From positions 285,370 to 349,369 of IMG/VR virus record IMGVR_UViG_3300034104_005687: a DNA stretch of 64,000 nt, one strand, 5' to 3'. Shown piece by piece: positions 50,572 to 64,000 of this stretch. Position numbers and translations under genes: made by a program. The notes under the pieces were generated by a model. That model ran no database searches, had not been told where the DNA came from, and was given only the letters and a program-made list of their open reading frames with translations. Position 1 is the stretch's first letter. Every line of letters begins with the position of its first letter.

Positions 50572-50582
50572 ACTTGGTATTC

Positions 50583-51149: not shown

Positions 51150-51242
51150 TTTTACATAAATATTGTTACCATCTGCTCAGATGTGTTATTTTTATTCATC
51201 AGAATAAAATTCATTAACCAAACAAAATTTTCAAGGATATCA

Positions 51243-52151
51243 ATGAAAAAAATTATTTCAGCATTGGCCATTGCTTTGGCATGTTTTTCAGCATCGGCTA
51301 CTCCTACCGCACCGCAAACTGTACAACTAGTTTGGCCTTTTGCTGTTGGGGGTATGGGAGCGATGACCCGAAGTCTTATGGATATTGCCAATCAACAACA
51401 AAGCACATATCAATTTGTGTTTACTCATAAACCAGGTGCCGGCAGCACAGTTGCTGCCAACTATGTGTTGTCTTCAACGTCGTTGACAGTGTTTGCAAAC
51501 TCTGATGGAATGTACACCAGACCACTGATGTACAACGAAAGTCACGATCCGGCTCAATTCCAATTGGTGAGTGCAACGTGCACAAACATTCCATTGGCAA
51601 TCTACAGCCGTCGATACGCATCTGTGGACAACTTAAAAAACAAAGATGTCAGCGTGGGTATTATCCCCGGAACTGCAACTCAATTGTTCACACGCTTGCT
51701 GTCGGCCAACAATCCTGATTTAAAATTCACCGACGTGCCATACAAAGGTATTCCTGAATCAACTGTTGATGTGTTGGGCGGACATGTTGACGCCAATGTT
51801 GCCTTTCTTGGCAAAACAGGCTCTGCGCTGGCTTCAGGAGACGTATCACTTCTTGGTATTTCAGGAACTCGTAGTTTTCCTGGTGCGCCCACTTTTGCAA
51901 GTTTAAAAGTAAAAGGTGTTGAACAATTGACCAATGGTTACTATATCTTTGTTCCACGAACTGTTGATGCAAAAATAGCACAAGACCTCAATAGAATATT
52001 CAACAATGCTGCCAATTCAGATGCTTTCAAAGAAATTTGCACAGGAGAACGCGGGACTGTAGAGTCTGTGACATTTGGACAAACAGAAAAAATGCATCAA
52101 TCCAACATACAGCAATGGACTCGATTCACCCGCGGTATTGCAAAACAGTAA
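51243..52151 (+). CDS. Bug/TctC substrate-binding protein
   Basis: Signal peptide, WPFAVGG, KPGAG, VPYKG..DVLGGHVD. Confidence 0.85.
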   Translation: MKKIISALAIALACFSASATPTAPQTVQLVWPFAVGGMGAMTRSLMDIANQQQSTYQFVFTHKPGAGSTVAANYVLSSTSLTVFANSDGMYTRPLMYNESHDPAQFQLVSATCTNIPLAIYSRRYASVDNLKNKDVSVGIIPGTATQLFTRLLSANNPDLKFTDVPYKGIPESTVDVLGGHVDANVAFLGKTGSALASGDVSLLGISGTRSFPGAPTFASLKVKGVEQLTNGYYIFVPRTVDAKIAQDLNRIFNNAANSDAFKEICTGERGTVESVTFGQTEKMHQSNIQQWTRFTRGIAKQ

Positions 52152-52205
52152 TTTTGGATAGTTACAGAACTCACCAACAAAAGTACATTTTTATGAATTA
52201 TTTGT

Positions 52206-53477
52206 ATGTACCCACCAGCAGATAAAAATCGTTATGGATACTACACTGTTGGTGATTTCAAAACTTACAGCAAACTGGAAGCCATAGAACTCAGCGGAAA
52301 AATCAAACAACCTCTACAATGGAGATTCAACCAGCCCAAATTTGAGCAGTTTGACTGGACGCACGAACCTCCGGGTAGTTTGGAATTTTGGTACAAACAA
52401 CGGGCACAGCAGCTGAGAGAACAATATGATTATATTGTTATATGGTATTCTGGCGGCGCTGACAGTCACAATGTTCTTATGAGTTTTGTGAGAAACAATA
52501 TTTTTGTCGACGAGATTGCACAATACCACAATCTCAACGGTGACAAAGGCAACAAAAATACATATCTCAACGAAGAAGTATTTGCCACCTCCGCTCCTAT
52601 CACTCAGGATCTAATTGCAAACAATCCACTGTATCGTCATACCAAACACAGATTGGTAGATCTGTCAGACATACAAATGAAGATTCTTAAAGAAGACAGC
52701 AACAAATGGGACTATGTTTACAAAGTAGGAACCCATCCAAGCCCCAATGCACTGGCCAGAAGCTATCTTCGAGAAGTTATACCTGATTATGTTTCTTTAA
52801 TTGAACAAGGCAAACGTGTTTGTTTTTTGTTTGGCGCCGAAAAACCACTGGTACAATATCACAACGCTGATTGGTACGTGGCATTTCAGGACATGCTGGA
52901 CAATGCAGTGAGCCCAAGAACACAGATGTTGAATAGAGCATGGGAACATGACGAACTGTTTTACTGGAGCGATACCATGCCTCAATTGGCTGCAAAACAA
53001 GCTCATGTAGTAAAACGTTTTTTAAGTGGGCTCTCCCCAGAATTAGTTGACAATGTGCATGTTTCTTCTTACAATAAGTTATATGACGAATATGGCAGGA
53101 AAAAAGTAAATTCCTGGTGTGCCAATATTGACGTGAGCGGAATCAAATATCAATTGTTGCCCGATGGCCTTCATCGTTTGATCTACCCTGACTGGAATCC
53201 AATGTCTGTTGTTGCCAATAAGCCTCCGAGTACTTTGTATACTCCAAGAGATACCTGGATGTTTAACTCTGCAGCCCCCGATATTGGACAAAAATACTAT
53301 CATCACGGGTTATTGCATTTGCGACAGTTGGTCAAAAAGGCAGCCCCAGAATATTGGTGGGAATTCAAATATGATCCCGAATCAGGCATGCCATATGTTG
53401 GTGGATTAACGGCATGCTACAATAGGTACTGTCTGACGCCGAAATCAGGAATTGCCCAACCCACAACAATCAAATGA
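52206..53477 (+). CDS. PP-loop (adenine nucleotide alpha hydrolase-like) protein
   Basis: YSGGADS. Confidence 0.7.
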   Translation: MYPPADKNRYGYYTVGDFKTYSKLEAIELSGKIKQPLQWRFNQPKFEQFDWTHEPPGSLEFWYKQRAQQLREQYDYIVIWYSGGADSHNVLMSFVRNNIFVDEIAQYHNLNGDKGNKNTYLNEEVFATSAPITQDLIANNPLYRHTKHRLVDLSDIQMKILKEDSNKWDYVYKVGTHPSPNALARSYLREVIPDYVSLIEQGKRVCFLFGAEKPLVQYHNADWYVAFQDMLDNAVSPRTQMLNRAWEHDELFYWSDTMPQLAAKQAHVVKRFLSGLSPELVDNVHVSSYNKLYDEYGRKKVNSWCANIDVSGIKYQLLPDGLHRLIYPDWNPMSVVANKPPSTLYTPRDTWMFNSAAPDIGQKYYHHGLLHLRQLVKKAAPEYWWEFKYDPESGMPYVGGLTACYNRYCLTPKSGIAQPTTIK

Positions 53478-54703
53478 ACCATTACAATACTCAATTTTTT
53501 GATGTAACGCTGGAACAAAATTTCAAGTTAGGATATTATCAAGTTGGCAATCAAATTTATGTCAGCAAAGTCCAAGCCTTGATGGAAGCCACCAAAACCA
53601 ACCAGTTTCCACATTGGAATTTCAACAACGAAGTTTTTTCCAAACAGGCCTGGACTGCGGAGCCTGAAGTCAATATAAGAGAACTGTATAGACTGCGAGC
53701 TCAGCAACTGCGTGACAAGTATGACTACATCAGAATTGAATGCAGCGGCGGCGGAGACAGCACACAGGTAGTCTACAATTTTTTGCTCAACAACATTCAT
53801 GTTGACGAAATTTTGGTTCGATATCCCAAGGCCGGCGAACACAACATCAAAAAAGACCCCTTCAACTTCAGAGTAGAAAATCATCTCAGTGAATATGAAT
53901 ATGCTGCTCGACCACTGTTGAACTGGGTCAAAACAAATTTTCCCAAAGTAAAAATCACTGTCCATGACTACAGTGAAGACATGTTGAACGACACAGACCG
54001 TGACGAATCTTGGGTGTATGCTGCCAAGGACTTTTTGCAACCAGCACACGTGACCAAGTTCACCACATATCATACCATGGATCAACGAACCCTGGTGGAC
54101 CAAGGCAAAAAGATTTGCATATTGTACGGTATTGACAAACCCAAAATTTGCCACAAAGACGGCAAATGGTATTTGTATTTTATAGATTTTCAAGCCAACT
54201 ATGCCAATTCGGATGTTGGAGAATACAACAATATCACCAATGAATATTTTTTCTGGACTCCAGATTTCCCTGAGATACTGTTGAAGCAAGCACACATCAT
54301 TGTGAAATGGTTTAATCAACCAGCCAACCGTCATTTACAGTATCTGGCCAGATGGCCTAATCACAGTAATTTACAACGCACAGCATACGAAGCCTGTGTC
54401 AAACCCCTGATTTATGTAGATTACGATCCTGCCACTTTTCAGGTAGCCAAGCCTATTACTAATTTTTACAGTGAAATGGACCATTGGTTCTATACCAATT
54501 TCAAGGATCACAAACTGTACAGTAGTTGGAAAGCAGGCATTGACTTTGTTGAACGCACCATAGACAACAAATATTTCAACAAAGAATTCGGACGCAATAT
54601 CGGATTTATTGGATTCTTGAGTCCCTTCTACTATATCAGAGACGTAGAGCACGGCCAGGATCAACACATCAAGTTAGCAACAAATAACTTTGACAGATTT
54701 TGA
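53474..54703 (+). CDS. PP-loop protein, paralog of preceding gene
   Basis: RAQQLR..YD, SGGGDS, KQAH shared. Confidence 0.7.
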   Translation: MNHYNTQFFDVTLEQNFKLGYYQVGNQIYVSKVQALMEATKTNQFPHWNFNNEVFSKQAWTAEPEVNIRELYRLRAQQLRDKYDYIRIECSGGGDSTQVVYNFLLNNIHVDEILVRYPKAGEHNIKKDPFNFRVENHLSEYEYAARPLLNWVKTNFPKVKITVHDYSEDMLNDTDRDESWVYAAKDFLQPAHVTKFTTYHTMDQRTLVDQGKKICILYGIDKPKICHKDGKWYLYFIDFQANYANSDVGEYNNITNEYFFWTPDFPEILLKQAHIIVKWFNQPANRHLQYLARWPNHSNLQRTAYEACVKPLIYVDYDPATFQVAKPITNFYSEMDHWFYTNFKDHKLYSSWKAGIDFVERTIDNKYFNKEFGRNIGFIGFLSPFYYIRDVEHGQDQHIKLATNNFDRF

Positions 54704-54889
54704 CTCACTAAGTACAAAGCAACGCCGCACTGCCGACGTCGGACAACATATTGACGCTTGAGGTACAAAAACCTCTTTACTGCTGTGATACATGCAGAAC
54801 GCCAATTCCCGTAAGTAGAAAATCTACCAGCCAAACATCATTGACAAATTCACACAGAATTTGTATAATTTTACATTGGAGAAACAAAC

Positions 54890-55798
54890 ATGAAAAAACT
54901 TTTAACTGCTGTGGTTCTGTCCATGGCCGCACTGAGTGCAAATGCCAAAGAAACCATTCAAATCATCTATGGGTTTGGAGCCGGTGACAACAGCACCAAC
55001 TATGCTCGCAACATGGCCGCAGAAGCCAACAAAATTCAAAACAAATACAATTTTGTGTTTGACGTCAAGTCCGGCGGCGGACAAGTCGTGGCCTTTAACT
55101 ATGTGAAAAATACGTCAGGTGCAATTTTTATGACATCGGGTGCATATTGGCTGCGACCCAATTTCTATCCCACAGCAAGTTATGATGTCAACGAATTTCG
55201 CACCATCATGACACAATGCAGTGTGCCGTTTGCTGTGGCATCCAAGAAGCATGCCAACTGGGCCAGTGTGCCCAAAAATCAGCCAATTACCATTGCCACC
55301 TCGGGGCTGGGAGTGGTCAGTCATTTGACAGCATTGCAAATTCAAAAGATATATCCCAACTCCACTATTGTGCCATACAAGAGCACTTCCGAAGCATTGG
55401 TTGCCACAATGTCAGGACAAGTTGATCTTGTAGTGGGTTTTGTAGGCGACATCGAAAAATACACACAAGAAGGATTTGCTGGAAAACTAACTACCTTGGG
55501 CACCACCGGTCCCAAGTTTGTGGGCAACTATCCTAACTTGACCAGTCAGGGATTCCCTGCACCGCTGGCCAAGATGAATACTCCCTACAACTTGATGGTG
55601 CCACGATCTTTTCCTGAAGACAAAGCCAAAGAAATTCGTGAAATCTTGTTGTCGGTGGAAAACAAAAAATCAGTACGTGATGCATATGCACTGGACCATT
55701 GCCAGCCTTTCCAAGTACCTGCAAAGGATCTTGGCACCTGGTGGAACGAGCAAAATCAATACTGGTCTGGTTTGACTGTTGGCGTCAAGATTGATTAA
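54890..55798 (+). CDS. Bug/TctC substrate-binding protein
   Basis: Signal peptide, VPYKS..SGQVD. Confidence 0.8.
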   Translation: MKKLLTAVVLSMAALSANAKETIQIIYGFGAGDNSTNYARNMAAEANKIQNKYNFVFDVKSGGGQVVAFNYVKNTSGAIFMTSGAYWLRPNFYPTASYDVNEFRTIMTQCSVPFAVASKKHANWASVPKNQPITIATSGLGVVSHLTALQIQKIYPNSTIVPYKSTSEALVATMSGQVDLVVGFVGDIEKYTQEGFAGKLTTLGTTGPKFVGNYPNLTSQGFPAPLAKMNTPYNLMVPRSFPEDKAKEIREILLSVENKKSVRDAYALDHCQPFQVPAKDLGTWWNEQNQYWSGLTVGVKID

Positions 55799-55808
55799 AT
55801 AAAAGTTA

Positions 55809-56176
55809 TTGCTGTATGAAGCAAAGAGAAAAGTGTCTTGGACGGGGGTGCGAATCCCCCCAGGTCCACCAATAAGGATGATTATGAACGTTACACAAAC
55901 ATTAAAAGTTACAGGCTATCTAGTAGGTGCATACATTGCTTACAAGTTAGGTCTTGAAGTGTGGTGTGTTGTTTATGGACTGCTTTATTGATGGGCCTGA
56001 CCTAGATTCGACAGGGCAACAAGTAAATTAGTGGACAGCTCGGCAATGTGAAAGCCGTTAGGGTTGGGAGAACTCGGCCGTAGAAGCAAAAAAAGTAACC
56101 GCAAACGACTCACAGTTCGCATTGGCAGCTTGAACAAGGCTACCTAGGGTAAGACATACCTCGTAACAGAAACTCC
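55809..56176 (+). ncRNA. ssrA: Circularly permuted two-piece tmRNA, tag ANDSQFALAA; outer ends approximate
   Basis: T-arm + CAGGTCCACCA (ends 55871) precedes GGGCCTGA..GATTCGAC (55993); G3-U70 pair; tag 56101-56133. Confidence 0.9.
55884..55991 (+). CDS. 35-aa hydrophobic ORF inside the tmRNA intervening segment
   Basis: AAGGA RBS; fills the spacer almost exactly. Confidence 0.45.
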   Translation: MNVTQTLKVTGYLVGAYIAYKLGLEVWCVVYGLLY

Positions 56177-56203
56177 AAAAAGGCGTCAAAATACGCCTTT
56201 TTT
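56177..56203 (+). terminator. Intrinsic terminator
   Basis: AAAAGGCGT..ACGCCTTTTTT. Confidence 0.8.
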
Positions 56204-56278
56204 GTTGACTTAGTTAGTAAAACCACTATATACTTGTCTATGGTCGACTTTGATCATACTTTCTAAAGGAAAAATCTA

Positions 56279-57160
56279 ATGAAGAAAATTTTAGTTACAG
56301 CCGCTTTGTTGGCTACTTGTGCTCTGGCTTCTGCACAAACTACTGTGTACGGTCGGATGAACGCCACAGTTGACAACACCAAAACAGGTGCCAGCACTGT
56401 CAACAGCATCGCCAACGATATCAGCCACATTGGCTTTCGTGTACAAGAAAATATCGGCAAGGGCTTGACAGCTCGTGCTGTGATCGAAACTGGCATTAAC
56501 AGCCAAGATCCCACCGGTGGTACAGACACACAGCTGGGCAATCGCCACAGCACTGTGGGTCTTGTTGCCAAAGCAGGTAGCCTGGACCTAGGACGTAGAA
56601 CTCACGGCATCTTTACCACTGCTGCCGACAATGATTCTTTTGGCGCACTGTACGGCAGTATTGCTGGTGATGTACACAATCTACGTGGCAATCGACTCAG
56701 CAACGGCGTGTTTGCTCGTGTTACTGCTTTTCCCGGTGTAGCATTGGGTGCTGACCGTACTCATACTGCTGCCGGTCAAGAAGTCACTGTATACAGTGCC
56801 GGCGCCAAGTTTGGCATTGTCAACACCAGTGTTGCTCAATTTGATCAAGGTGCCGAAAAGAGCACAATGCTTGGCGCCAATGCCAAGTTTGGTGCAACCA
56901 CTGTGTTTTACAGCCACAGTGACAATCAAGGCGTTGTTGCCAACAAAGGCAACTTGGTTGGCGCTGCTCAAAAAGTAGGTGCTTACACCCTCAAGGCCAG
57001 CTATGGCAAGACCAACGCCGATGTTGAAGCCTACAATGTTGGTGCTGAGTATGCACTCAGCAAACGTACTGATCTCTTGGTCAGCTATCGCAACGTTGAC
57101 AAAACAGGTTCTGTCAACGACGTCAAACAGGTTGGCGTAGGCGTTACACATCGCTTCTGA
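56279..57160 (+). CDS. Gram-negative general porin
   Basis: Signal peptide, TVYG, GAEYALSKRT, terminal HRF. Confidence 0.9.
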   Translation: MKKILVTAALLATCALASAQTTVYGRMNATVDNTKTGASTVNSIANDISHIGFRVQENIGKGLTARAVIETGINSQDPTGGTDTQLGNRHSTVGLVAKAGSLDLGRRTHGIFTTAADNDSFGALYGSIAGDVHNLRGNRLSNGVFARVTAFPGVALGADRTHTAAGQEVTVYSAGAKFGIVNTSVAQFDQGAEKSTMLGANAKFGATTVFYSHSDNQGVVANKGNLVGAAQKVGAYTLKASYGKTNADVEAYNVGAEYALSKRTDLLVSYRNVDKTGSVNDVKQVGVGVTHRF

Positions 57161-57178
57161 TTTCAGTAGTGTACTAAC

Positions 57179-57206
57179 AAAACCCGCCGAGGCGGGTTTT
57201 CTTTTT
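57179..57206 (+). terminator. Intrinsic terminator
   Basis: AAAACCCGCC-GA-GGCGGGTTTT. Confidence 0.85.
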
Positions 57207-57222
57207 GATTAAATTGTCGGGT

Positions 57223-57240
57223 CTGTAACAAAATTGTAAC
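57223..57240 (+). promoter_or_regulatory. Pho box
   Basis: CTGTAAC-AAAA-TTGTAAC, 11-bp period. Confidence 0.7.
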
Positions 57241-57261
57241 AGTCTTCGTCTTAAATAATAG

Positions 57262-58143
57262 ATGAAGACATATCGCTCAATCTTTGTCAGTGATGTCCAT
57301 CTTGGAACCAAAGATTGTCAAGCCGATCGTCTCAATAACTTTCTCAAACACAACACCTGTGACACACTGTATCTAGTAGGCGATATTATCGATGCCTGGA
57401 AGATACAACAAAACAAATGGCGCTGGAAACAAAGCCATACCAACGTGGTACGCAGAGTACTGGGTCATGCCAAGCGCGGAACCCGTGTAGTATTCATAGC
57501 AGGCAATCACGATGAATTCCTTAGGCCCATGATACCTTATGGTTTCAGTTTTGGTTTAATAGAAATACACAATCAAACGGAACACATAGGCGCAGATGGT
57601 AAGCACTACTTAGTTGTTCACGGTGACTTGTTTGACGGCATCACCCGCCTAGCACCATGGATAGCATTCTTAGGAGATAAAGCATATGATGTTGTTCTTG
57701 CACTCAACAATAAATTTAATTGGATTCGTCGTCGCATGGGTTTTGGGTACTTTAGCCTTAGCCGGTATCTTAAGTACAAAGTTAAAAAAGCAGTAGACTT
57801 TGTGTTCAAGTTTGAAGAGAATTTAGCCAACTACTGCAAAAAGCGTGGCTTTGATGGAGTCATCTGCGGACACATACATCACGCAGAAATAAAAGAAATC
57901 AACGGTGTCGCATACATGAATGATGGCGACTGGGTTGAATCGTGTACAGCACTTGTAGAACATCACGATGGCCGTTGGGAAATCGTAACTTGGACCAAGG
58001 AGAGCGACCATGTGGATACTGATAATACTGGCAGTGCATCTAAACAATCCAAAAGACATTCCAGGACGGGTAATGATAGAATTTCCTACCCTCCAGGACT
58101 GCGAGCGAGCTCGGTCAACAATGACCAGTTGGCTAAAATTTGA
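57262..58143 (+). CDS. plcP: PlcP-like metallophosphoesterase (LpxH-related phospholipase C)
   Basis: SDVHLG, LVGDIID, GNHD, HGD, GHIH, NDGDWVES; Pho box and downstream GT. Confidence 0.7.
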   Translation: MKTYRSIFVSDVHLGTKDCQADRLNNFLKHNTCDTLYLVGDIIDAWKIQQNKWRWKQSHTNVVRRVLGHAKRGTRVVFIAGNHDEFLRPMIPYGFSFGLIEIHNQTEHIGADGKHYLVVHGDLFDGITRLAPWIAFLGDKAYDVVLALNNKFNWIRRRMGFGYFSLSRYLKYKVKKAVDFVFKFEENLANYCKKRGFDGVICGHIHHAEIKEINGVAYMNDGDWVESCTALVEHHDGRWEIVTWTKESDHVDTDNTGSASKQSKRHSRTGNDRISYPPGLRASSVNNDQLAKI

Positions 58144-58183
58144 TAACTTCAAGGTGGTAGCAGAATGCAAGAAACAACTCTAA
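58010..58183 (+). CDS. 57-aa ORF overlapping the plcP tail
   Basis: AAGGAG RBS; MWILIILAVH... Confidence 0.5.
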   Translation: MWILIILAVHLNNPKDIPGRVMIEFPTLQDCERARSTMTSWLKFDNFKVVAECKKQL

Positions 58184-58884
58184 GCGACACAATTACCATA
58201 GTGGTACCCTGTAAGAATGAGGAGAACTATATTGCACATTTATTAATGCACCTACGCCAGCAGTCAATAGGTCGTACTAGAATTATCATTGCCGACTGTT
58301 CAACAGACCGCACTCGAGAAGTTATAGAAATAATGAAAGGTGAATTGAATGTTGAAATCATTGAGGGCGGGCCTGTTTCTACTGCCAAGAACCGTGGAGC
58401 ACAACTGGTCACCACTCCCTACATCTTGTTCGTTGACGCTGATGTACGTTTCTTCAAAGACACAGTCATCCGTGATGCTGTTGACCTAATAGAGTCTAAA
58501 AACCTAGATCTTATCGGCCTGAATATCAAATGCTATGACAAGGACCTACGAGCAAAGATTGGATTCACTGCATTTAATTTAATCAATCATGCATTAAAAT
58601 ACTTTTCGCCATTTGCTGTAGGAGCGTTCATGCTGACCCGCAGAGATCGTTTTGAAGAGTATGGCGGCTTTCCTGAACAATTTTCCACCAGCGAAGACTT
58701 CTTCTTGTCAAGAAAGTACAATCCTCGAAAGTTCAAAATTGTAAAACATTACTTTGGACAGGATAGTCGTAGATTTAAGAAGATGGGTTATTTTGGGATG
58801 GGCAAATACCTAATAAAGAACTTTGTTAATCGCAACAACCAGGCATATTGGAACCGTTTGGACGGATCCAAATACTGGTCATAA
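58165..58884 (+). CDS. GT2 glycosyltransferase
   Basis: VVPCKNE, STDRT, FVDAD, GGF..SED. Confidence 0.88.
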   Translation: MQETTLSDTITIVVPCKNEENYIAHLLMHLRQQSIGRTRIIIADCSTDRTREVIEIMKGELNVEIIEGGPVSTAKNRGAQLVTTPYILFVDADVRFFKDTVIRDAVDLIESKNLDLIGLNIKCYDKDLRAKIGFTAFNLINHALKYFSPFAVGAFMLTRRDRFEEYGGFPEQFSTSEDFFLSRKYNPRKFKIVKHYFGQDSRRFKKMGYFGMGKYLIKNFVNRNNQAYWNRLDGSKYWS

Positions 58885-58904
58885 TTTTGTAACAAAATTG
58901 TAAT
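58876..58904 (+). promoter_or_regulatory. Pho box with three half-sites
   Basis: TGGTCAT/TTGTAAC/TTGTAAT at 58876, 58887, 58898. Confidence 0.75.
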
Positions 58905-58946
58905 ATTATTCTACTTAAATAATTTTGTCACAACAAGGAGAACCCA

Positions 58947-59951
58947 GTGAACAAACTACTAGCAATTTTATTAGCCGCAGTAACGGTGTCAGCACAAGCT
59001 GCAGACATCACAGGCGCAGGCGCCACTTTCCCGTTCCCAATCTATGCCAAGTGGGCTGAAGCCTACAAGAAAGAAACAGGCATTGGGCTCAACTATCAAT
59101 CAATTGGATCATCGGGCGGCATTAGACAAATCAATTCCAGGACTGTGACGTTTGGCGCAACAGACGCACCTGTTAAGGGCGAAGATCTTGACAAGAATGG
59201 TCAAGTGCAGTTTCCGGCCATCATTGGTGGTACTGTGCCTATTGTTAACTTAGATGGTTTCAAGCCAGGCGAACTACGCATCACAGGACCTGTTATGGCT
59301 GAAGTGTTCATGGGCAACATCTCTAAATGGAATGACCCTAAACTAACAGCATTGAATCCAGGTAAGAATTTACCTAACGAACCAATCACAGTGGTTCACC
59401 GCGCTGATGGTTCAGGCACAACATTCAACTGGACTGACTATCTAAGCACAGTCAGCAAAGAGTTCAATGATAAAGTAGGAAAAGGTGCCGCAGTTAAATG
59501 GCCGGCTGCCACTTCAATTGGTGGCAAAGGCAATGAAGGTGTTGCTGCCAACGTCAACAGAGTTAAGGGCAGTATTGGTTATGTAGAGTATGCTTATGTT
59601 AAGAAAAACAACATGACGTTCCTACAACTACAAAACAAGTCAGGAAAGTATGTTAGCCCAGATGACTTAACATTTGCCGCAGCCGCAGATGGCGCCGATT
59701 GGTTCTCAGTACCTGGCATGGGATTAAGCATTGTTGATCAACGTAATCCTAATGCTTGGCCAGTGAGTTCAGCCAGTTTCATCATCATGTACAAGACTCC
59801 TGCTAACAAAGCCAATAGCGATGAAGTGTTAAAGTTCTTTGACTGGGCATTCAAGAACGGCAAGAAAGATGCTGTAGATTTAGACTACGTGCCATTGCCT
59901 GATGCTCTAACAAAGCAGATCCGTGAACGTGTTTGGACTCAGATCAAGTAA
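58947..59951 (+). CDS. pstS: Phosphate ABC transporter substrate-binding protein
   Basis: GAGATFP, YQSIGS, RADGSGTT, GYVEY. Confidence 0.97.
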   Translation: MNKLLAILLAAVTVSAQAADITGAGATFPFPIYAKWAEAYKKETGIGLNYQSIGSSGGIRQINSRTVTFGATDAPVKGEDLDKNGQVQFPAIIGGTVPIVNLDGFKPGELRITGPVMAEVFMGNISKWNDPKLTALNPGKNLPNEPITVVHRADGSGTTFNWTDYLSTVSKEFNDKVGKGAAVKWPAATSIGGKGNEGVAANVNRVKGSIGYVEYAYVKKNNMTFLQLQNKSGKYVSPDDLTFAAAADGADWFSVPGMGLSIVDQRNPNAWPVSSASFIIMYKTPANKANSDEVLKFFDWAFKNGKKDAVDLDYVPLPDALTKQIRERVWTQIK

Positions 59952-59997
59952 ATCGACCACAACGATAGAGTGGCGCTGGAACTCGTAACCAGCATGC

Positions 59998-60023
59998 AAA
60001 AAGGCTACTTTGATAGCCTTTTT
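59998..60023 (+). terminator. Intrinsic terminator
   Basis: AAAAAGGCTA..TAGCCTTTTT. Confidence 0.8.
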
Positions 60024-60025
60024 CT

Positions 60026-60207
60026 TTGACTTTTTTGTTGCAGGCATATATAATGCACTATGATGACAGCAATCGCATTCACCGTGAAAAACATACCGGC
60101 CATTTGTGAGCAGGCCTATGAGCATGATTACCCGCGAGGTCTTTGTCGTTGTAGTTAACAAAAGTACTACATTCTGCAAAGACCCGCACACTAGGCGGGT
60201 TTTTTTA
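60026..60207 (+). promoter_or_regulatory. Attenuator-like unit 1: promoter, 32-aa leader ORF (60060-60158), antiterminator, terminator
   Basis: TTGACT-17-TATAAT; 60138-60146 pairs with 60176-60184, overlapping terminator 60181-60207. Confidence 0.6.
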
Positions 60208-60311
60208 TGGCGGTAGACACAATATTCACAATTTGCTACAATAGAAACAAGTTAGGAAATACAGCAAAGTTTGCAAAGACCCTACAAATTGAAGGGCTTT
60301 TGCAAAACAAG

Positions 60312-60393
60312 TTGACCAGTAAAACACAAGATGTTATACTAGAGACTAGTTAGGAAATAGTAGATCGAGACTGTTTTCAAAGTTCGTTAAAAA
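60312..60393 (+). promoter_or_regulatory. Sigma70 promoter and boxA-like element for tRNA array
   Basis: TTGACC-17-TATACT; GTTCGTTAAAAA at 60382. Confidence 0.55.
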
Positions 60394-60429
60394 ATTCAAG
60401 TTTGTATAGTGTACTCGGGCTTGCTCGGG

Positions 60430-60696
60430 CACTATATGTAAACACATTAAGGTTACCTACACTGTTAGGGGTGAACGAAAAGGCGTTGAAGAAGTACTTC
60501 GGTACACGGCCTTGATACCCATGAAGCAGGAAGCCCGAAATAGATACCTGAGCCTATACCAAAGGCAACGAGCGGTTGAAATAGGGAACAACTTCTGGGA
60601 ATGCGACAGGCTAAACAGTAGGCTGTAATGAGAAAAAATGTAAACTAACAGGTGGTGCTGAGTTTATATCCTCCCTTAATGTTTTTTCATATAGTG
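60430..60696 (+). ncRNA. Stem-closed putative small RNA
   Basis: CACTATATG.AAACACATTAAGG pairs with CCTTAATGTTTTTTCATATAGTG. Confidence 0.5.
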
Positions 60697-60704
60697 ATTT
60701 TTTT

Positions 60705-60780
60705 GGTCTTAAAGTGTTCATGGACGCACGATGGCTTGTCACGCCATAAGAGTGGGGATCGTTACCCCCTAAGACCGCCA
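60705..60780 (+). tRNA. tRNA-Asp (GTC)
   Basis: Cloverleaf, atypical T loop, CCA. Confidence 0.82.
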
Positions 60781-60859
60781 AGTTTTGAGAGCCACATCGC
60801 CCTGATACTTCCCTCGGTAACGAGGCACTAGGTCTTGCAACCGTGGCTCTCCTCTTTTT

Positions 60860-60934
60860 GCTGGGTTCGTCTATCGGTTAGGACACAAGCCTTTCACGTT
60901 TGTAAGACGGGTTCGATTCCCGTACCCAGTACCA
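60860..60934 (+). tRNA. tRNA-Glu (TTC)
   Basis: Cloverleaf, CCA. Confidence 0.9.
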
Positions 60935-60938
60935 TTTT

Positions 60939-61024
60939 GGAGATGTAGGAAAATTGGTAACCCCAGTGGACTGTAAATCCGCCGCCTTACGGCACTACTG
61001 GTTCGACTCCAGTCGTCTCCACCA
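60939..61024 (+). tRNA. tRNA-Tyr (GTA)
   Basis: Type II cloverleaf, CCA. Confidence 0.9.
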
Positions 61025-61231
61025 ATGAACGTTCCGGGTGTCTCCGGATAGTGTGACCCACACGATGAGAAGTTGAGTGACATCAACGGGTGGTAGTCTT
61101 TGAACCCAAAGGCCGCTGGCAATGCGAGAACGGTCCCTGTCGGGAAGCGGGTGGAAGGTACGTGTGATGGGTACGATAGCGTCGTATCTTGATGTACTAC
61201 AATTACCGCCGGGGGATGCAGAGCATTTTTG

Positions 61232-61389
61232 TTTTTATAGTCAAGCATCGATACAGGTATCGTGACAGGACGCTGTCACTATTCGGGCCTAACTGTGCGA
61301 GGAACAGGTCCTGACATAACTGCTATTCGCTTGTCAGTGTTAGCTACATTGTTGACAAATCGGCATCTCTCGGTGCTTGACTATAAAAA
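61232..61389 (+). ncRNA. Stem-closed putative small RNA
   Basis: 20-bp closing stem 61232-61251 / 61370-61389. Confidence 0.5.
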
Positions 61390-61392
61390 TAT

Positions 61393-61470
61393 GTAGGGGT
61401 GGCAGAGTGGTCAAATGCAACGGATTGCAAATCCGTAAAGCCGTGAGTTCAAATCTCACTCCCTACTCCA
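61393..61470 (+). tRNA. tRNA-Cys (GCA)
   Basis: Cloverleaf, U73, CCA. Confidence 0.88.
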
Positions 61471-61557
61471 TTGATAAACACATTCACAGATCCGCCCTGT
61501 TACCTAGGGAGTCAGCGAGTAACCGCTTATGGACTGTTCAAGAGTGTGTTTTTCAAT

Positions 61558-61649
61558 GGGAGTGAGACTTGGTAGTCAGAGAGGTCTTATATACCTTTTA
61601 GCGCCAGATTAGCGTTCTTGAGAGAGTTCGATCCTCTCCACTCCTACCA
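61558..61649 (+). tRNA. Atypical tRNA with TAT anticodon and long variable arm
   Basis: GGGAGTG/CACTCCT acceptor, GAGGT-CTTATAT-ACCTT, T arm, CCA. Confidence 0.65.
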
Positions 61650-61659
61650 TAAATAATGG

Positions 61660-61735
61660 CGCAGTGTGTTAGAAGCGGTATCTGGCAAGGCTCATAACCT
61701 TGAGGTCGGGGGTTCGATTCCCTCCACTGCAACCA
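61660..61735 (+). tRNA. tRNA-fMet-like (CAT)
   Basis: C1xA72 mismatch, CCA. Confidence 0.82.
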
Positions 61736-61793
61736 ATTTGAGTCGTGTGATATAAATATCACACAAGAGCTTCTTGAGGTCAACCTCAAGAAG

Positions 61794-62004
61794 TAAATAA
61801 AGTACAATAGGACTTATGATGCAAACAATCATTCATTCACAGTTAAAATCCGCAATGTGCCCCCAGACACTGGTCTGGTCACGCGGCTTTACATCTGCGA
61901 ATAGTATTCCAGGGTCACCTGGGTCCTTTGAAGGCGAGAAGATTCTAAAAGTCTAACTCGCACAAATTCAAAAGGACCCCGGGACTAAAAACCCCGGGGT
62001 TTTT
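61794..62004 (+). promoter_or_regulatory. Attenuator-like unit 2: 46-aa leader ORF (61816-61956), antiterminator, terminator
   Basis: 61921-61932 pairs with 61967-61979, overlapping terminator 61976-62004. Confidence 0.6.
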
Positions 62005-62186
62005 CTTTTAGTGCAACGGCAACGCGAGCCGGCAACACTCTAAACTGCAAATGGGCGGCCTGTAGGATGGAGCACTTCTTCTAGTGTGAAAAATTACAGC
62101 GTATTAAAGCATTCTTTAAGAACAGGCAGCCTAAGTATTTTAGAGTGCTTTAATACACACATTCCTAAGAGTGTGTTTGAAAATTT

Positions 62187-62261
62187 GGGCTGATAGTGAT
62201 AATGGGAGCACAGTGGCTTTGCAAGCCTCGGGTCGGGGTTCGATCCCCCGTCGGTCCACCA
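62187..62261 (+). tRNA. tRNA-Ala (TGC)
   Basis: G3-U70, CCA. Confidence 0.9.
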
Positions 62262-62266
62262 AATAG

Positions 62267-62340
62267 GTATCCATAGTGTAATGGCAGCATCGCGGTCTCC
62301 AAAACCGTCAGTCTAGGTTCGAGTCCTAGTGGGTACGCCA
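62267..62340 (+). tRNA. tRNA-Trp (CCA)
   Basis: Cloverleaf, CCA. Confidence 0.9.
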
Positions 62341-62348
62341 AGTTTTGT

Positions 62349-62422
62349 TCGGGTATAGTGTAATGGTAACACCACAGACTTTGACTCTGTTATTCTAGGT
62401 TCGAGCCCTAGTACCCGTGCCA
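62349..62422 (+). tRNA. tRNA-Gln (TTG)
   Basis: Cloverleaf, CCA. Confidence 0.9.
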
Positions 62423-62430
62423 GTTTCGTT

Positions 62431-62504
62431 GCTCGGTTAGTTAAATGGTATAACGGACGCTTGATAAGCGTTTATTACAAGTTCAATTCTTGTACTGAGC
62501 ACCA
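62431..62504 (+). tRNA. tRNA-Ile (GAT)
   Basis: Cloverleaf, CCA. Confidence 0.9.
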
Positions 62505-62549
62505 ATTTTTGTAGGCGGTCACAGAGCCGTCTATAAGTAAAAAGTTCAT

Positions 62550-62639
62550 GGTGCGGTCCTATAATGGTATTAGAGCGGATTGCTAATCCGTCGCTCGGTG
62601 AAAGCCGGGTTCTGAGTTCGAGTCTCAGTCGCACCGCCA
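62550..62639 (+). tRNA. tRNA-Ser (GCT)
   Basis: Type II cloverleaf, CCA. Confidence 0.9.
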
Positions 62640-62645
62640 GAATAT

Positions 62646-62721
62646 TCCCCAGTAGCACAGCGGTAGTTGCACTTGACTGTTAATCAAGGTGTCCGTGGTT
62701 CGATCCCACGCTGGGGAGCCA
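62646..62721 (+). tRNA. tRNA-Asn (GTT)
   Basis: Cloverleaf, CCA. Confidence 0.9.
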
Positions 62722-62726
62722 AGTTT

Positions 62727-62800
62727 GCCCTATTAGTATAATGGTATTACACCTGTTTTGTAATCAGGTTACGGCAGTTCGATTCTGTCATGGGGCACCA
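62727..62800 (+). tRNA. tRNA-Thr (TGT)
   Basis: Cloverleaf, CCA. Confidence 0.9.
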
Positions 62801-62807
62801 AAACAAC

Positions 62808-62881
62808 GCGGGATTAGTTTAATGGTCAAACGAAACCTTGCCAAGGTTTAGTCAGGAGTTCGATTCTCCTATCCCGCTCCA
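62808..62881 (+). tRNA. tRNA-Gly (GCC)
   Basis: Cloverleaf, CCA. Confidence 0.9.
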
Positions 62882-62885
62882 TCTT

Positions 62886-62959
62886 GCTCCTATAGTATAA
62901 TGGTAATACACGCCCTTGGTAAGGGCGAGCCGCAAGTTCAATTCTCGCTAGGAGCACCA
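62886..62959 (+). tRNA. tRNA-Thr (GGT)
   Basis: Cloverleaf, CCA. Confidence 0.88.
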
Positions 62960-63014
62960 TTTACAAGTCTACACTCTCCCTTGACGAGCTAGGTCCCTGG
63001 ACTTTTGTTTCACT

Positions 63015-63092
63015 GCGTCTCTAGTTCAACTGGATAGAACACCGGCCTACGAAGCCGTGAGGTTGGGGATTCGAATTCCTCGGGACGCACCA
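63015..63092 (+). tRNA. tRNA-Arg (ACG)
   Basis: Cloverleaf, CCA. Confidence 0.85.
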
Positions 63093-63100
63093 AACAGCAG

Positions 63101-63129
63101 TTGACAACATTCTGTGATTGTTGTATAAT
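63101..63129 (+). promoter_or_regulatory. Consensus sigma70 promoter inside tRNA array
   Basis: TTGACA-17-TATAAT. Confidence 0.85.
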
Positions 63130-63239
63130 AATATTTTTGACACAAAGAGGTAATGACATGAAACGAGGTAAACTCTAGTGTCATCCTAGACCCCGTATGG
63201 TCCTGGATGGCACGATAAAGACAATTCTTTACGATCCAT

Positions 63240-63314
63240 CCCTTCGAGATGTTATGGTAGCATAGCGGACTCTTAATCCGACAAGCGTCAGTTCGACTCT
63301 GACCGGAGGGACCA
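63240..63314 (+). tRNA. tRNA-Lys (CTT)
   Basis: Cloverleaf with A8, CCA. Confidence 0.8.
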
Positions 63315-63317
63315 TAT

Positions 63318-63392
63318 GGGGGTATAACTTAACGGCTAAAGTAGTAGGCTTTTAACCTATTAATCAGAGTTCGATTCTCTGTGCCCCTACCA
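63318..63392 (+). tRNA. tRNA-Lys (TTT)
   Basis: Cloverleaf, CCA. Confidence 0.9.
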
Positions 63393-63474
63393 TATAAAAA
63401 CACATTACAAGCGGTATCGCTTTTCGGCAAAGCCCGTGCCAAAGTAGTCAGTCTAGGATAGTGTGTTTCTATAT

Positions 63475-63549
63475 GGTGTCCATAGTTTAGTGGTAAAACC
63501 GCGGGTTGTGATTCCGCTATCACGAGTTCGATTCTCGTTGGATACCCCA
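63475..63549 (+). tRNA. tRNA-His (GTG)
   Basis: G-1:C73, CCA. Confidence 0.9.
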
Positions 63550-63559
63550 AAATATTTTG

Positions 63560-63634
63560 GGTTGTATGACATAGACGGATGTGTACCGGCTTCATAAGCC
63601 GAGGAGGTTGGATCGATACCAACTACAACCACCA
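63560..63634 (+). tRNA. tRNA-Met (CAT)
   Basis: Cloverleaf, CCA. Confidence 0.82.
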
Positions 63635-63635
63635 A

Positions 63636-63710
63636 GGGCCTTTAGTTCAACGGATAGAATGCCATGCTTCGAACTTGGCGATGTGGGTTCGATTCCTGCA
63701 GGGCCCGCCA
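63636..63710 (+). tRNA. tRNA-Arg (TCG)
   Basis: Cloverleaf, CCA. Confidence 0.88.
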
Positions 63711-63711
63711 G

Positions 63712-63882
63712 TTAGATGTTTTCGATAAAATTCAATGCGTCTTCCATGTTGGTAAAATATCGCATGGTCAGGCGTTCGTTGTAAATATCGTTGACAAAGA
63801 TGTAGCACACAGATGCATCGTGGTTGACGGATAGGTGTATATGAGCCCATCCGTTGGCAGCAAAGAAGTCACGTTGTTGCAT
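63712..63882 (-). CDS. 56-aa hypothetical protein antisense between two tRNAs
   Basis: Minus-strand TAAATA at 63887-63892, 4 nt before ATG; fills the spacer exactly. Confidence 0.55.
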   Translation of the reverse strand: MQQRDFFAANGWAHIHLSVNHDASVCYIFVNDIYNERLTMRYFTNMEDALNFIENI

Positions 63883-63894
63883 CAAGTATTTATT

Positions 63895-63968
63895 GCGGGG
63901 TTCGTATAGTGGTAATACCTTAGCCTTCCAAGCTAAAGCGAGGGGTTCGATTCCCCTACCCCGCTCCA
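63895..63968 (+). tRNA. tRNA-Gly (TCC)
   Basis: Cloverleaf, CCA. Confidence 0.92.
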
Positions 63969-64000
63969 AAGGATTATAACATGATAATTGAAAGCACATC

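What the first reader, a model, noticed from the sequence alone, without database searches (positions are those of the whole stretch)
60026..62004. Two leader-peptide attenuators positioned to gate the tRNA arrays
Seen twice with unrelated sequence: promoter, short ORF (32 aa at 60060-60158; 46 aa at 61816-61956), a segment in the ORF 3' end (GGTCTTTGT; GGGTCCTTTGAA) complementary to the left arm of a downstream intrinsic terminator, then a tRNA block. Neither peptide is enriched in one amino acid. Known: this geometry matches ribosome-coupled attenuation. Inference: complete translation masks the antiterminator so transcription stops, while general stalling (host tRNA cleavage or starvation) allows read-through into phage tRNAs. 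That would be a translation-health sensor. Caveat: additional promoters lie downstream of unit 1.
Basis: partly seen in the sequence, partly recalled or inferred. Interest (0 to 1): 0.8.

Follow-up and report, generated by a model that had tools for sequence, protein, structure and literature searches.

The report
Translation-coupled terminator switches in phage tRNA arrays
Two short, translated reading frames in the tRNA region of a 349-kb phage each end in a segment that competes with a downstream transcription terminator, a design kept in dozens of related phages, so ribosome progress may set how much of the phage's tRNA array is transcribed.

Summary

Both units are conserved families in related IMG/VR jumbo-phage contigs: 35 distinct unit-1 sequences and 10 distinct unit-2 sequences, always at the same place in the tRNA region.
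- The ORFs stay open, while the other two frames carry 1-5 stops.
- The ATG lies 5-7 nt after the -10 box (leaderless). Three unit-2 relatives have a 5'UTR instead, and there a Shine-Dalgarno site precedes the ATG.
- The peptides are weakly constrained (dN/dS 0.4-0.67, against 0.10 for pstS).
- In every lineage the best partner of the terminator's 5' arm lies near the ORF's 3' end, although the pairing sequence differs between lineages. It survives local frame changes.

- Unit 2 carries the only recognisable promoter for the next 10-16 tRNAs, and its transcripts must pass its terminator.
- Unit 1 is always followed by another strong promoter, so it cannot gate the array.
- At equilibrium the switch is clear only in unit-1 subfamilies A and B.
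- The two units share sequence and are probably paralogues.
- Neither peptide has a run of one amino acid.

This is a new variant of leader-peptide attenuation, and it has not been tested experimentally.

The parts
59998..60023 (+). Terminator hairpin of the upstream pstS gene. It closes the preceding transcription unit.
   Evidence: terminator scan. pstS is identified by Pfam PBP_like_2.
60026..60054 (+). Unit-1 promoter P1, TTGACT-17-TATAAT.
   Evidence: 11 of 12. The hexamers and the CACTATG junction are conserved in homologues.
60060..60158 (+). Unit-1 leader ORF, 32 codons. The ATG lies 5 nt after the -10 box and there is no SD site, so it would be leaderless.
   Evidence: The frame is open in 35 of 35 distinct homologues, while the other frames carry 73 and 110 stops. 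All indels are in-frame. dN/dS is 0.41-0.60.
60133..60146 (+). Unit-1 antiterminator 5' strand (GCGAGGTCTTTGT), covering codons 25-29.
   Evidence: It pairs with 60176-60187 in the MFE folds. Duplex energy is -17.9 kcal/mol, shuffle p=0.003.
60150..60171 (+). Inner hairpin TGTAGT/ACTACA, with the TAA stop codon in its loop.
   Evidence: It is kept in subfamilies A, B and C.
60176..60206 (+). Antiterminator 3' strand, overlapping the intrinsic terminator (5' arm 60180-60187, 3' arm 60195-60202, T-run to 60206).
   Evidence: The stem shows compensatory changes.
60214..60340 (+). Two further sigma70-like promoters, P2 at 60214-60242 and P3 at 60312-60340, directly after the unit-1 terminator.
   Evidence: 10 of 12 each, both with TG. 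A promoter in this position was found in 7 of 8 representative homologues.
60705..61735 (+). tRNA block 1: Asp, Glu, Tyr, Cys, a long 'Ile-TAT'-like tRNA, and Met.
61780..61808 (+). Unit-2 promoter, TCAACC-17-TACAAT. It is weak in the window. Its -35 box sits in the loop of hairpin 61770-61793.
   Evidence: Read. The homologous promoter is TTGACA/TTGACC-17-TATAAT/TACAAT (11-12 of 12) in 9 of the 10 distinct unit-2 sequences.
61816..61956 (+). Unit-2 leader ORF, 46 codons. It is leaderless in the window. L087, L134 and L162 instead have a 47-48 nt 5'UTR with an AAGGAA Shine-Dalgarno site.
   Evidence: There are 0 in-frame stops against 1-5 in the other frames. dN/dS is 0.56.
61874..61913 (+). 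Conserved hairpin inside the ORF: TCTGG 61874-78 pairs with CCAGG 61909-13, with an inner stem 61882-86 / 61895-99. It may be a 1:2-type or pause hairpin.
   Evidence: alifold. The inner stem has compensatory pairs (GC in 5 sequences, CG in 3).
61914..61932 (+). Unit-2 antiterminator 5' strand (GGTCACCTGGGTCCTTTGAA).
   Evidence: In the nascent-RNA fold it sequesters the whole terminator 5' arm. Duplex energy is -19.7 kcal/mol, p=0.010.
61967..62009 (+). Antiterminator 3' strand, overlapping the intrinsic terminator (5' arm 61976-61983, 3' arm 61993-62000, TTTTTCTTTT to 62009).
   Evidence: Four stem pairs show compensatory changes.
62010..62186 (+). Conserved structured spacer with no sigma70-like promoter.
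   Evidence: One search lists no + strand promoter between 60340 and 63101. One search finds none in 9 of 9 homologues. One search shows covarying helices.
62187..63092 (+). tRNA block 2: Ala, Trp, Gln, Ile, Ser, Asn, Thr, Gly, Thr, Arg. It can be reached only by reading through the unit-2 terminator.

Best explanation
Both units are ribosome-dependent transcription attenuators. Each is a terminator switch coupled to translation, and the two are probably paralogues.

Proposed mechanism:
1. A host-type sigma70 promoter starts an mRNA at or next to the AUG of a 31-46-codon ORF.
2. The last codons of the ORF form the 5' strand of an antiterminator helix. Its 3' strand is the 5' arm of an intrinsic terminator 21-37 nt beyond the stop codon.
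3. If a ribosome has reached the end of the ORF when RNA polymerase makes the terminator, the antiterminator strand is masked, the terminator folds and the transcript ends after about 150-195 nt.
4. If the ribosome is absent, late or stalled further upstream, the antiterminator forms first and polymerase reads on.

For unit 2, reading on means transcribing the following 10-16 tRNA genes, which have no other recognisable promoter. For unit 1 it only adds P1 transcripts to a tRNA block that also has its own promoters.

Shown here: the anatomy, its conservation, maintenance of the ORFs, co-variation of the competing helices, and promoter presence or absence. Inferred: the transcription start sites, translation of the ORFs, the kinetic competition, and the physiological signal.
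For: Distribution and position:
- There are 35 distinct unit-1 and 10 distinct unit-2 homologues. Unit 1 always lies upstream of the first Glu/Tyr/Asp tRNA block. Unit 2 always lies in front of the Ala/Trp/Gln... block, after tRNA-Met in most contigs.

Evidence that the ORFs are translated:
- There are no in-frame stops, against 2-3 per sequence in the other frames, and indels are in-frame.
- The ATG lies 5-7 nt after the -10 box. Three unit-2 relatives have a 47-48 nt 5'UTR instead, and there an AAGGAA SD site precedes the ATG.
- dN/dS is 0.41-0.67, against 0.10 for the neighbouring pstS. The frame matters more than the peptide sequence.

Evidence for the competing helices:
- In every homologue the best ORF partner of the terminator 5' arm lies close to the ORF's 3' end, between -26 and +2 of the stop codon in unit 1 and between -38 and -8 in unit 2. 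Shuffle p values run from below 0.004 (0 of 300 shuffles) to 0.1.
- The pairing sequence differs by lineage: GGGTCTTTG, AGCGGG, GGGAGG..., and AGAGGGTT opposite a CCCTTAGA arm.
- An ORF end pairs better with its own terminator arm than with arms from other lineages (-16.2 against -12.6 kcal/mol; none of 20,000 permutations was as favourable).
- The antiterminator nucleotides are kept through local frame changes in L090 and L165.
- The stop-to-terminator spacing is conserved at 21-37 nt.

Folding:
- In the window's unit 1 the free RNA keeps the antiterminator. P(terminator) rises from 0.00 to 0.84 when a ribosome footprint at the stop codon is masked. Most of subfamily A behaves the same way, and B goes from about 0.6 to 0.94.
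- In unit 2 the nascent RNA sequesters the whole 5' arm.

Promoters:
- No promoter follows the unit-2 terminator in 9 of 9 homologues, while unit 2's own promoter scores 11-12 of 12 in 9 of the 10 distinct sequences.
Against: - A conserved strong promoter follows the unit-1 terminator in 7 of the 8 representative homologues examined, so that terminator cannot decide whether the tRNAs are made.
- At equilibrium the terminator wins whatever is masked in unit-1 subfamilies C, D and E and in the window's unit 2 (P about 0.9). In several unit-2 relatives it loses even with a ribosome at the stop codon.
- In unit 2 the antiterminator strand lies 21-37 nt before the stop codon, outside a ribosome parked there.
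- There is no run of regulatory codons.
- The transcription start sites, translation of the ORFs and terminator efficiencies are all unmeasured, and the host is unknown.
- The shuffle and permutation statistics do not correct for relatedness among the sequences.
Confidence: 0.5

Rival explanations
1. The units are self-contained micro-genes. Each expresses a small early phage peptide from its own promoter and ends at an ordinary terminator. The complementarity between the ORF end and the terminator is only part of an extended 3' stem-loop that stabilises the short mRNA. The downstream tRNAs are made by terminator leakage or from promoters that were not recognised.
For: - The ORFs are clearly maintained and carry proper start signals.
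- Some residues are conserved: AYE and GLC in unit 1, and W-S-[RH]-G-F..V-N-S-I-P-G in unit 2.
- Unit 1 is a closed promoter-to-terminator unit followed by its own next promoter.
- dN/dS below 1 allows some selection on the peptide.
- In the full-length MFE fold of the window's unit 2, part of the helix coexists with the terminator.
Against: - dN/dS is 4-6 times higher than for pstS.
- The conserved 'peptide motifs' coincide with RNA helices. W and IPG are the two arms of a covarying hairpin.
- GGGTC and GAGGTCTTTGT are kept even where the reading frame over them changes.
- No family match was found in Pfam or PHROGs, and only 6 hypothetical clusters turned up among 5.8 billion proteins.
- A consensus promoter with no other promoter before 10-16 tRNAs is hard to explain if the terminator is meant to be final.
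Confidence: 0.28
2. The terminated 150-195 nt transcripts are the functional products. They would be small regulatory RNAs, possibly dual-function like attenuator-derived sRNAs that also encode a peptide, acting in trans on host or phage targets.
For: - Each unit has a strong promoter followed by a Rho-independent terminator.
- The folds are much more stable than shuffled sequences (z = -3.8 and -4.9).
- Nucleotide-level conservation includes third codon positions, for example across subfamilies C and D.
- There is a precedent: the Sinorhizobium trp attenuator yields the sRNA rnTrpL and the peptide peTrpL (PMC6614838 and PMC7968998, listed).
Against: - Strict maintenance of the ORF and in-frame indels are not needed for a pure sRNA.
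- No Rfam family matches.
- No target is known.
- This reading does not exclude attenuation and could coexist with it.
Confidence: 0.1
3. The arrangement is chance: short ORFs and complementary segments that happen to lie near ordinary terminators in an intergenic tRNA region.
For: - Short ORFs are everywhere (124 ORFs of at least 20 aa in 7 kb).
- The number of terminator-like sites is not above the shuffle expectation.
- A weak Rfam Trp_leader hit is below threshold.
Against: The ORF, its start context, the stop-to-terminator spacing and the pairing are all conserved across 45 distinct homologues, while the pairing sequence itself turns over between lineages.
Confidence: 0.02

Closest known systems
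Leader-peptide transcription attenuators of amino-acid biosynthetic operons (trpL, hisL, leuL, thrL, ilvL, pheL)
   Same: - A promoter-proximal short translated ORF.
- A segment near the end of the ORF that competes with the 5' arm of an intrinsic terminator.
- Ribosome position deciding between the two folds.
- In unit 2, an additional hairpin inside the ORF, which recalls the 1:2 pause structure.
- In unit 2, no promoter between the terminator and the regulated genes.
   Different: - There is no run of codons for one amino acid.
- The ORFs are leaderless in most members.
- The regulated genes are tRNAs in a phage, not biosynthetic enzymes.
- Unit 1 is followed by its own promoters.
- The Rfam Trp_leader score is 21.6 bits against a gathering score of 41, so this is not a family member.
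Stalling-sensing leader ORFs upstream of antibiotic-resistance genes (for example the mef/mel(msrD) attenuator, PMC4335068; erm/cat-type leaders from general knowledge)
   Same: A short leader ORF without an amino-acid run, in which general or drug-induced ribosome stalling prevents terminator formation and lets transcription continue.
   Different: - Those elements control resistance proteins in bacteria and often rely on specific arrest peptides.
- Here the downstream genes are phage tRNAs, and no arrest motif has been shown.
Leaderless short-ORF attenuators of mycobacteria (Cys 'ribulon', bioRxiv 10.1101/834739)
   Same: A leaderless 5'-AUG short ORF as the first cistron, acting as a sensor of ribosome pausing for downstream genes.
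   Different: [quoted passage not shown]
- Here there is no codon tract. The read-out would be intrinsic termination before genes that are not translated.
Phage tRNA-rich regions with their own strong promoters (T5 tRNA-Tyr region, PMC11555353)
   Same: tRNA arrays in large lytic phages driven by strong host-type promoters. The phage tRNAs serve to keep translation going when host tRNAs are attacked (PMC10264068, PMC11555353).
   Different: No leader ORF / terminator switch in front of phage tRNA blocks turned up in the literature searched.

Membership tests
Leader-peptide (ribosome-mediated) transcription attenuators | A short ORF directly downstream of the promoter that is translated. | tested here: met
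   By sequence only. The frame is open in 35 of 35 and 10 of 10 distinct homologues, while the other frames carry stops, and indels are in-frame. The start is leaderless, or SD-led where a 5'UTR exists. No ribosome data are available.
Leader-peptide (ribosome-mediated) transcription attenuators | Mutually exclusive antiterminator and terminator helices that share the terminator 5' arm. | tested here: met
   The feature is conserved in all lineages while the sequence turns over. The equilibrium switch is clear only in unit-1 subfamilies A and B.
Leader-peptide (ribosome-mediated) transcription attenuators | Tandem regulatory codons for the sensed amino acid. | tested here: not met
   There is no run of codons and no enrichment of the relevant amino acids. 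Ratios for D, E and Y in unit 1 are 0.63, 0.99 and 1.32.
Leader-peptide (ribosome-mediated) transcription attenuators | The terminator lies between the leader and the regulated genes with no promoter in between (unit 2). | tested here: met
   No promoter scoring 9 of 12 or better lies between the terminator and the first tRNA in 9 of 9 homologues. Non-sigma70 promoters cannot be excluded.
Leader-peptide (ribosome-mediated) transcription attenuators | The terminator lies between the leader and the regulated genes with no promoter in between (unit 1). | tested here: not met
   One or two promoters scoring 9-11 of 12 follow within about 20-120 nt in 7 of the 8 representative homologues examined; L135 is the exception.
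Leader-peptide (ribosome-mediated) transcription attenuators | An upstream 1:2 (anti-antiterminator or pause) hairpin. | tested here: inconclusive
   Unit 2 has a conserved, covarying hairpin inside the ORF whose 3' arm (TTCCAGG) can also pair with the terminator arm. No consensus equivalent was found in unit 1.
Leader-peptide (ribosome-mediated) transcription attenuators | Read-through responds to translation of the leader. | not testable with these tools
   This needs reporters, Term-seq or coupled in vitro transcription-translation.
Rfam Trp_leader (RF00513) | A covariance-model score at or above the gathering threshold. | tested here: not met
   21.6 bits against 41, E=0.48, at 60141-60208.
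Leaderless short-ORF attenuators (mycobacterial type) | The transcript begins at the AUG of the short ORF. | tested here: inconclusive
   The ATG lies 5-7 nt after the -10 box in all unit-1 homologues and in 7 of 10 unit-2 homologues. The transcription start sites have not been mapped.
Leaderless short-ORF attenuators (mycobacterial type) | A poly-Cys (amino-acid) tract, and control through sequestration of the downstream ribosome-binding site. | tested here: not met
   There is no tract. The downstream genes are tRNAs and have no ribosome-binding site.
Ordinary small phage protein genes | Purifying selection on the amino-acid sequence, and homologues in other genomic contexts. | tested here: inconclusive
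   dN/dS is 0.41-0.67 against 0.10 for pstS. Only 6 hypothetical clusters were found, and there are no Pfam or PHROG hits.

The most novel reading that the evidence does not exclude
The leaders are tRNA-demand sensors matched to the tRNA genes they precede.

In unit 1, the position-conserved A-Y-E-x-D (D-L-Y-A-Y-E-R-E-D in subfamily B) sits just 5' of the antiterminator strand. The first tRNAs downstream are almost always Glu, Tyr and Asp, plus Leu in the Leu-rich subfamily B and clade A2.

In unit 2, the conserved Q-A..A-W and N-S-I codons precede a block that starts Ala, Trp, Gln, Ile, Ser, Asn.

Stalling at these codons, when the matching charged tRNAs are scarce (for instance after attack by an anticodon nuclease), would open the terminator and raise output of exactly those phage tRNAs. 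That would be a feedback loop.

The evidence is weak and post hoc:
- Overall composition shows no enrichment.
- The Leu association has a counter-example, L090.
- Cys does not track tRNA-Cys.
Probability: 0.1. Interest if true: 0.9.

Novelty: new variant of a known kind. Interest (0 to 1): 0.68.

Why it matters
Phage tRNA arrays are now seen as tools for keeping translation running when the host degrades or lacks tRNAs (PMC10264068, PMC11555353). How their expression is controlled is essentially unknown.

A conserved leader-ORF / terminator switch in front of a 10-16-gene tRNA block would be the first ribosome-mediated attenuator found to govern genes for non-coding RNA. It would link tRNA output directly to how well ribosomes are moving.

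It also gives a compact element of about 200 nt, mostly leaderless, with 45 distinct natural sequence variants. Attenuation without amino-acid codon runs could be tested on it directly.

Tried and rejected
- INPHARED megablast of 59900-64000 found no relatives.
- Downstream regions of 80 pstS relatives: only L009 keeps unit 1 next to pstS. pstS is therefore not a useful anchor, and the units travel with the tRNA array rather than with pstS.
- Pfam and PHROGs gave nothing for either peptide. The large protein search found 6 hypothetical clusters and no functional lead.
- Rfam gave only tRNAs and the tmRNA. Hits to Trp_leader and RsmY are below threshold and were rejected.
- RNAalifold on all 33 unit-1 sequences recovers only the terminator, because the antiterminator uses different registers in different subfamilies. 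RNAduplex with shuffles and own-versus-cross comparisons were used instead.
- Regulatory-codon idea: whole-leader composition shows no enrichment of D, E or Y. Cys codons do not follow tRNA-Cys, and Leu follows tRNA-Leu only imperfectly. The idea is kept only as the low-probability novel case.
- The conserved GGGCGG motif in the unit-2 spacer was tested as a possible phage-specific promoter. It is not repeated elsewhere in the window (9 matches against 7 expected), so this was rejected.
- The metagenome and genome scans were not used, because the viral collection already gave enough homologues.
Full report
**Setting.** The window is the last 64 kb of IMG/VR contig IMGVR_UViG_3300034104_005687, which is 349 kb long. 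It carries 25 tRNA genes and a permuted beta-type tmRNA. The genes just upstream of the finding encode a porin, a metallophosphoesterase, a family-2 glycosyltransferase, two TctC/Bug receptors and PstS, which points to a betaproteobacterial host. No sequenced phage in INPHARED is close.

**Checking the observation.**
- Unit 1: promoter TTGACT-17-TATAAT at 60026-60054 (11 of 12). ORF 60060-60158. GGTCTTTGT at 60138-60146 faces GCAAAGACC at 60177-60185. The terminator is AGACCCGC / GCGGGTTT plus a T-run, at 60180-60206.
- Unit 2: ORF 61816-61956. GGGTCCTTTGAA at 61921-61932 faces TTCAAAAGGACCC at 61967-61979. The terminator is ACCCCGGG / CCCGGGGT plus TTTTTCTTTT, at 61976-62009.
- Against dinucleotide shuffles of the ORF, the pairing with the terminator arm has p=0.003 (unit 1) and p=0.010 (unit 2).
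- Both transcripts fold far better than shuffles, with z = -3.8 and -4.9.
- The window's own unit-2 promoter is weak (TCAACC-17-TACAAT), and the scan did not list it.
- Both ATGs lie 5-7 nt after the -10 box and have no Shine-Dalgarno site.

**Relatives.** pstS has 308 relatives in IMG/VR, but only one of them (L009) keeps unit 1 beside it. Pattern scans anchored first on the stem and then, independently, on the promoter/ATG junction gave 35 distinct unit-1 sequences. These fall into subfamilies A to E plus two outliers, L116 and L135. Scans for unit 2 gave 10 distinct sequences. Unit 1 always lies 200-800 nt upstream of the first tRNA block, which is Glu/Tyr/Asp, with Leu added in some contigs. 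Unit 2 always lies in front of the Ala/Trp/Gln/Ile/Ser... block, after tRNA-Met in most contigs.

**The ORFs are maintained.**
- Frame 1 has no stop in any homologue. Frames 2 and 3 have 73 and 110 stops over the same spans in unit 1, and 1-5 per sequence in unit 2.
- Indels between subfamilies are whole codons.
- L087, L134 and L162 have a 47-48 nt 5'UTR in unit 2, and there an AAGGAA Shine-Dalgarno site sits before the ATG.
- The peptides themselves are weakly constrained. dN/dS is 0.41-0.67, against 0.10 for pstS in the same set of related contigs.
- No Pfam or PHROG family matches, and only six hypothetical clusters exist among 5.8 billion proteins.

**The competing helices are maintained.**
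- In all 35 unit-1 and 10 unit-2 sequences, the best partner of the terminator 5' arm within the ORF lies close to the ORF's 3' end, between -26 and +2 of the stop codon in unit 1 and between -38 and -8 in unit 2.
- The sequence that does the pairing differs by lineage. Subfamilies A and B use (G)GGTCTTTG with CAAAGACC(C). Subfamilies C, D and E use (A)GCGGG(T) with (A)CCCGC(T). L116 uses AGAGGGTT with AACCCTT, and L135 uses GGGGGTGTC with GACGCCC.
- ORF ends pair better with their own terminator arm than with arms from other lineages: -16.2 against -12.6 kcal/mol, and none of 20,000 permutations was as favourable. Relatedness inflates this figure.
- In L090 (unit 1) and L165 (unit 2) the reading frame over the antiterminator strand differs from that of the relatives, yet the nucleotides GAGGTCTTTGT and GGGTC are kept.
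- The terminator stems carry compensatory changes.
- The distance from the stop codon to the terminator is 21-37 nt.
- Unit 2 also has a conserved hairpin inside the ORF, CCUGG:CCAGG with a covarying inner stem. Its 3' arm (the I-P-G codons, TTCCAGG) can also pair with the terminator arm CCCTGGAA. This gives a 1:2 / 2:3 / 3:4 layout and suggests that the conserved W and IPG residues reflect RNA constraints rather than peptide function.

**Thermodynamics.**
- In the window's unit 1, the free RNA keeps the antiterminator and never forms the terminator. Forcing a ribosome-sized stretch at the stop codon to stay unpaired raises P(terminator) from 0.00 to 0.84. Most of subfamily A behaves the same way, and subfamily B goes from about 0.6 to 0.94.
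- In subfamilies C, D and E the terminator dominates in every condition.
- In the window's unit 2, the nascent RNA sequesters the whole 5' arm, but the full-length RNA prefers the terminator (P=0.88). Any switch there would have to be kinetic.

**What lies downstream.**
- After unit 1, a sigma70-like promoter follows within about 20-50 nt in 7 of the 8 representative homologues examined, and the window has two, P2 and P3. The exception is L135, where an SD-led ORF follows and the next promoter lies about 290 nt downstream. Unit 1 therefore cannot gate the array. At most it adds or withholds the transcripts that start at P1.
- After unit 2, none of 9 homologues has a promoter scoring 9 of 12 or better before the first tRNA, while unit 2's own promoter scores 11-12 of 12 in 9 of the 10 distinct sequences.
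- The 170-300 nt spacer is a conserved structured RNA. Its GGGCGG motif is not repeated elsewhere in the window, so it is unlikely to be a phage-specific promoter.
- Unit 2 thus has the classic layout of promoter, leader, terminator and then the regulated genes.

**Relation between the two units.** They are not unrelated. Their first 30 nt or so align (ATGATG.CA..CAATC..CATTCAC.GT.AAAA, z=3.9). The peptides both begin MMQ/T.I.., and both use a GGGTC / GACCC / GGGT-T5 core. They are probably diverged paralogues.

**Regulatory codons.** Neither leader is enriched for one amino acid, and overall composition does not favour the amino acids of the downstream tRNAs. A position-conserved A-Y-E-x-D sits just before the unit-1 antiterminator strand, in front of Glu/Tyr/Asp tRNA genes, and Leu-rich leaders mostly precede tRNA-Leu genes. 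L090 is a counter-example, Cys does not track tRNA-Cys, and the window of codons examined was chosen after seeing the data. This idea is kept only as the low-probability novel case.

**Comparison with known systems.**
- The anatomy is that of leader-peptide attenuation, but without codon runs.
- The sensing logic would be closest to stalling-sensing leaders of resistance genes (PMC4335068).
- The leaderless start recalls the mycobacterial Cys short ORFs (10.1101/834739), which act on translation rather than on termination.
- The Rfam Trp_leader score is below threshold.
- The literature searches found no description of attenuators in front of phage tRNA genes.

**Verdict.** The attenuator architecture is well supported by comparison between relatives. 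The gating role is plausible for unit 2 and not for unit 1. The sensor physiology remains inference.

Noticed in passing
window 60440-60700; also L127 and L148 downstream of unit 1: A conserved structured RNA of about 250 nt lies between promoter P3 and the first tRNA. It is closed by AAACACATTAAGG (60442-54) pairing with CCTTAATGTTT (60675-87). Blocks such as GGTTACCTA..GTTAGGGGTGAACGAA..GATACCCATGAAGCAGGA are shared with relatives. No Rfam hit.
   Followed up: partly
window 61476-61551, 62155-62178, 63398-63468: A repeated hairpin module, AMACACATT ... AGTGTGTTT, ends 7-9 nt before the 5' end of a tRNA (at 61558, 62187 and 63476). AGTGTGTTT occurs 6 times in the window against 1.6 expected, and 3 of those are in this 4-kb region. 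It may be a pre-tRNA leader or processing structure.
   Followed up: partly
window 62010-62186; L104, L163, L165, L167, L087, L134, L162, L164: The spacer after the unit-2 terminator is conserved. Its helices covary (GCGTATTAAAGCA/TGCTTTAATAC in some contigs, GCGTATCGAAG/CTTCGATAC in others), and inserts of variable length sit in the loops. Function unknown.
   Followed up: partly
window 60243-60265 and 60341-60363: The tandem promoters P2 and P3 are followed by the same initial transcribed sequence, AGA(A/G)AC(A/T)AGTTAGGAAAT. Relatives have it too. The P2 transcript ends after about 55 nt in a CAAAGACCCT..AGGGCTTTTG hairpin that reuses the CAAAGACCC motif of unit 1.
   Followed up: no
window 63101-63239: A perfect consensus promoter (TTGACA-17-TATAAT, 12 of 12) is followed by an SD-led 6-codon mini-ORF (ATG at 63158, MKRGKL). 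Then come two mutually exclusive hairpins that share GGATG (CATCC with GGATG, or GGATGG with CCATCC), just before tRNA-Lys at 63240. There is no T-run, so this is not a terminator.
   Followed up: no
window 61770-61793; homologous sites in L104, L087 and others: An inverted repeat encloses the -35 box of the unit-2 promoter in its loop. The arms differ between relatives but stay complementary: CTTCTTGAGG/CCTCAAGAAG, TTCGAGG/CCTCGAA and TTTAGTG/CACTAA.
   Followed up: no
window 61558-61649, 60705-60780, 63560-63631: The tRNA callers disagree. ARAGORN calls a 92-nt 'tRNA-Ile(TAT)', which Rfam scores only as tRNA-Sec-like (29.9 bits, below the gathering score). ARAGORN's tRNA-Asp at 60705-60780 is not found by Rfam. 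Rfam finds a tRNA at 63560-63631 that ARAGORN misses.
   Followed up: no
L109 (about 1147 nt after unit 1) and L147 (about 1497 nt after unit 1): ARAGORN reports a tRNA with a CUA anticodon (labelled Pyl) in the arrays of two relatives. This could be an amber-suppressor tRNA.
   Followed up: no
window 61233-61251 and 61371-61389: A long-range inverted repeat (TTTTTATAGTCAAGCATCG / GGTGCTTGACTATAAAAA) brackets about 120 nt just upstream of tRNA-Cys. Read.
   Followed up: no
window 50421-59951 and 55759-56224: A cluster of host-like auxiliary genes (two TctC/Bug receptors, a porin, an LpxH-like phosphoesterase, a GT2 glycosyltransferase and PstS) lies next to a permuted beta-type tmRNA with tag ANDSQFALAA.
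   Followed up: partly
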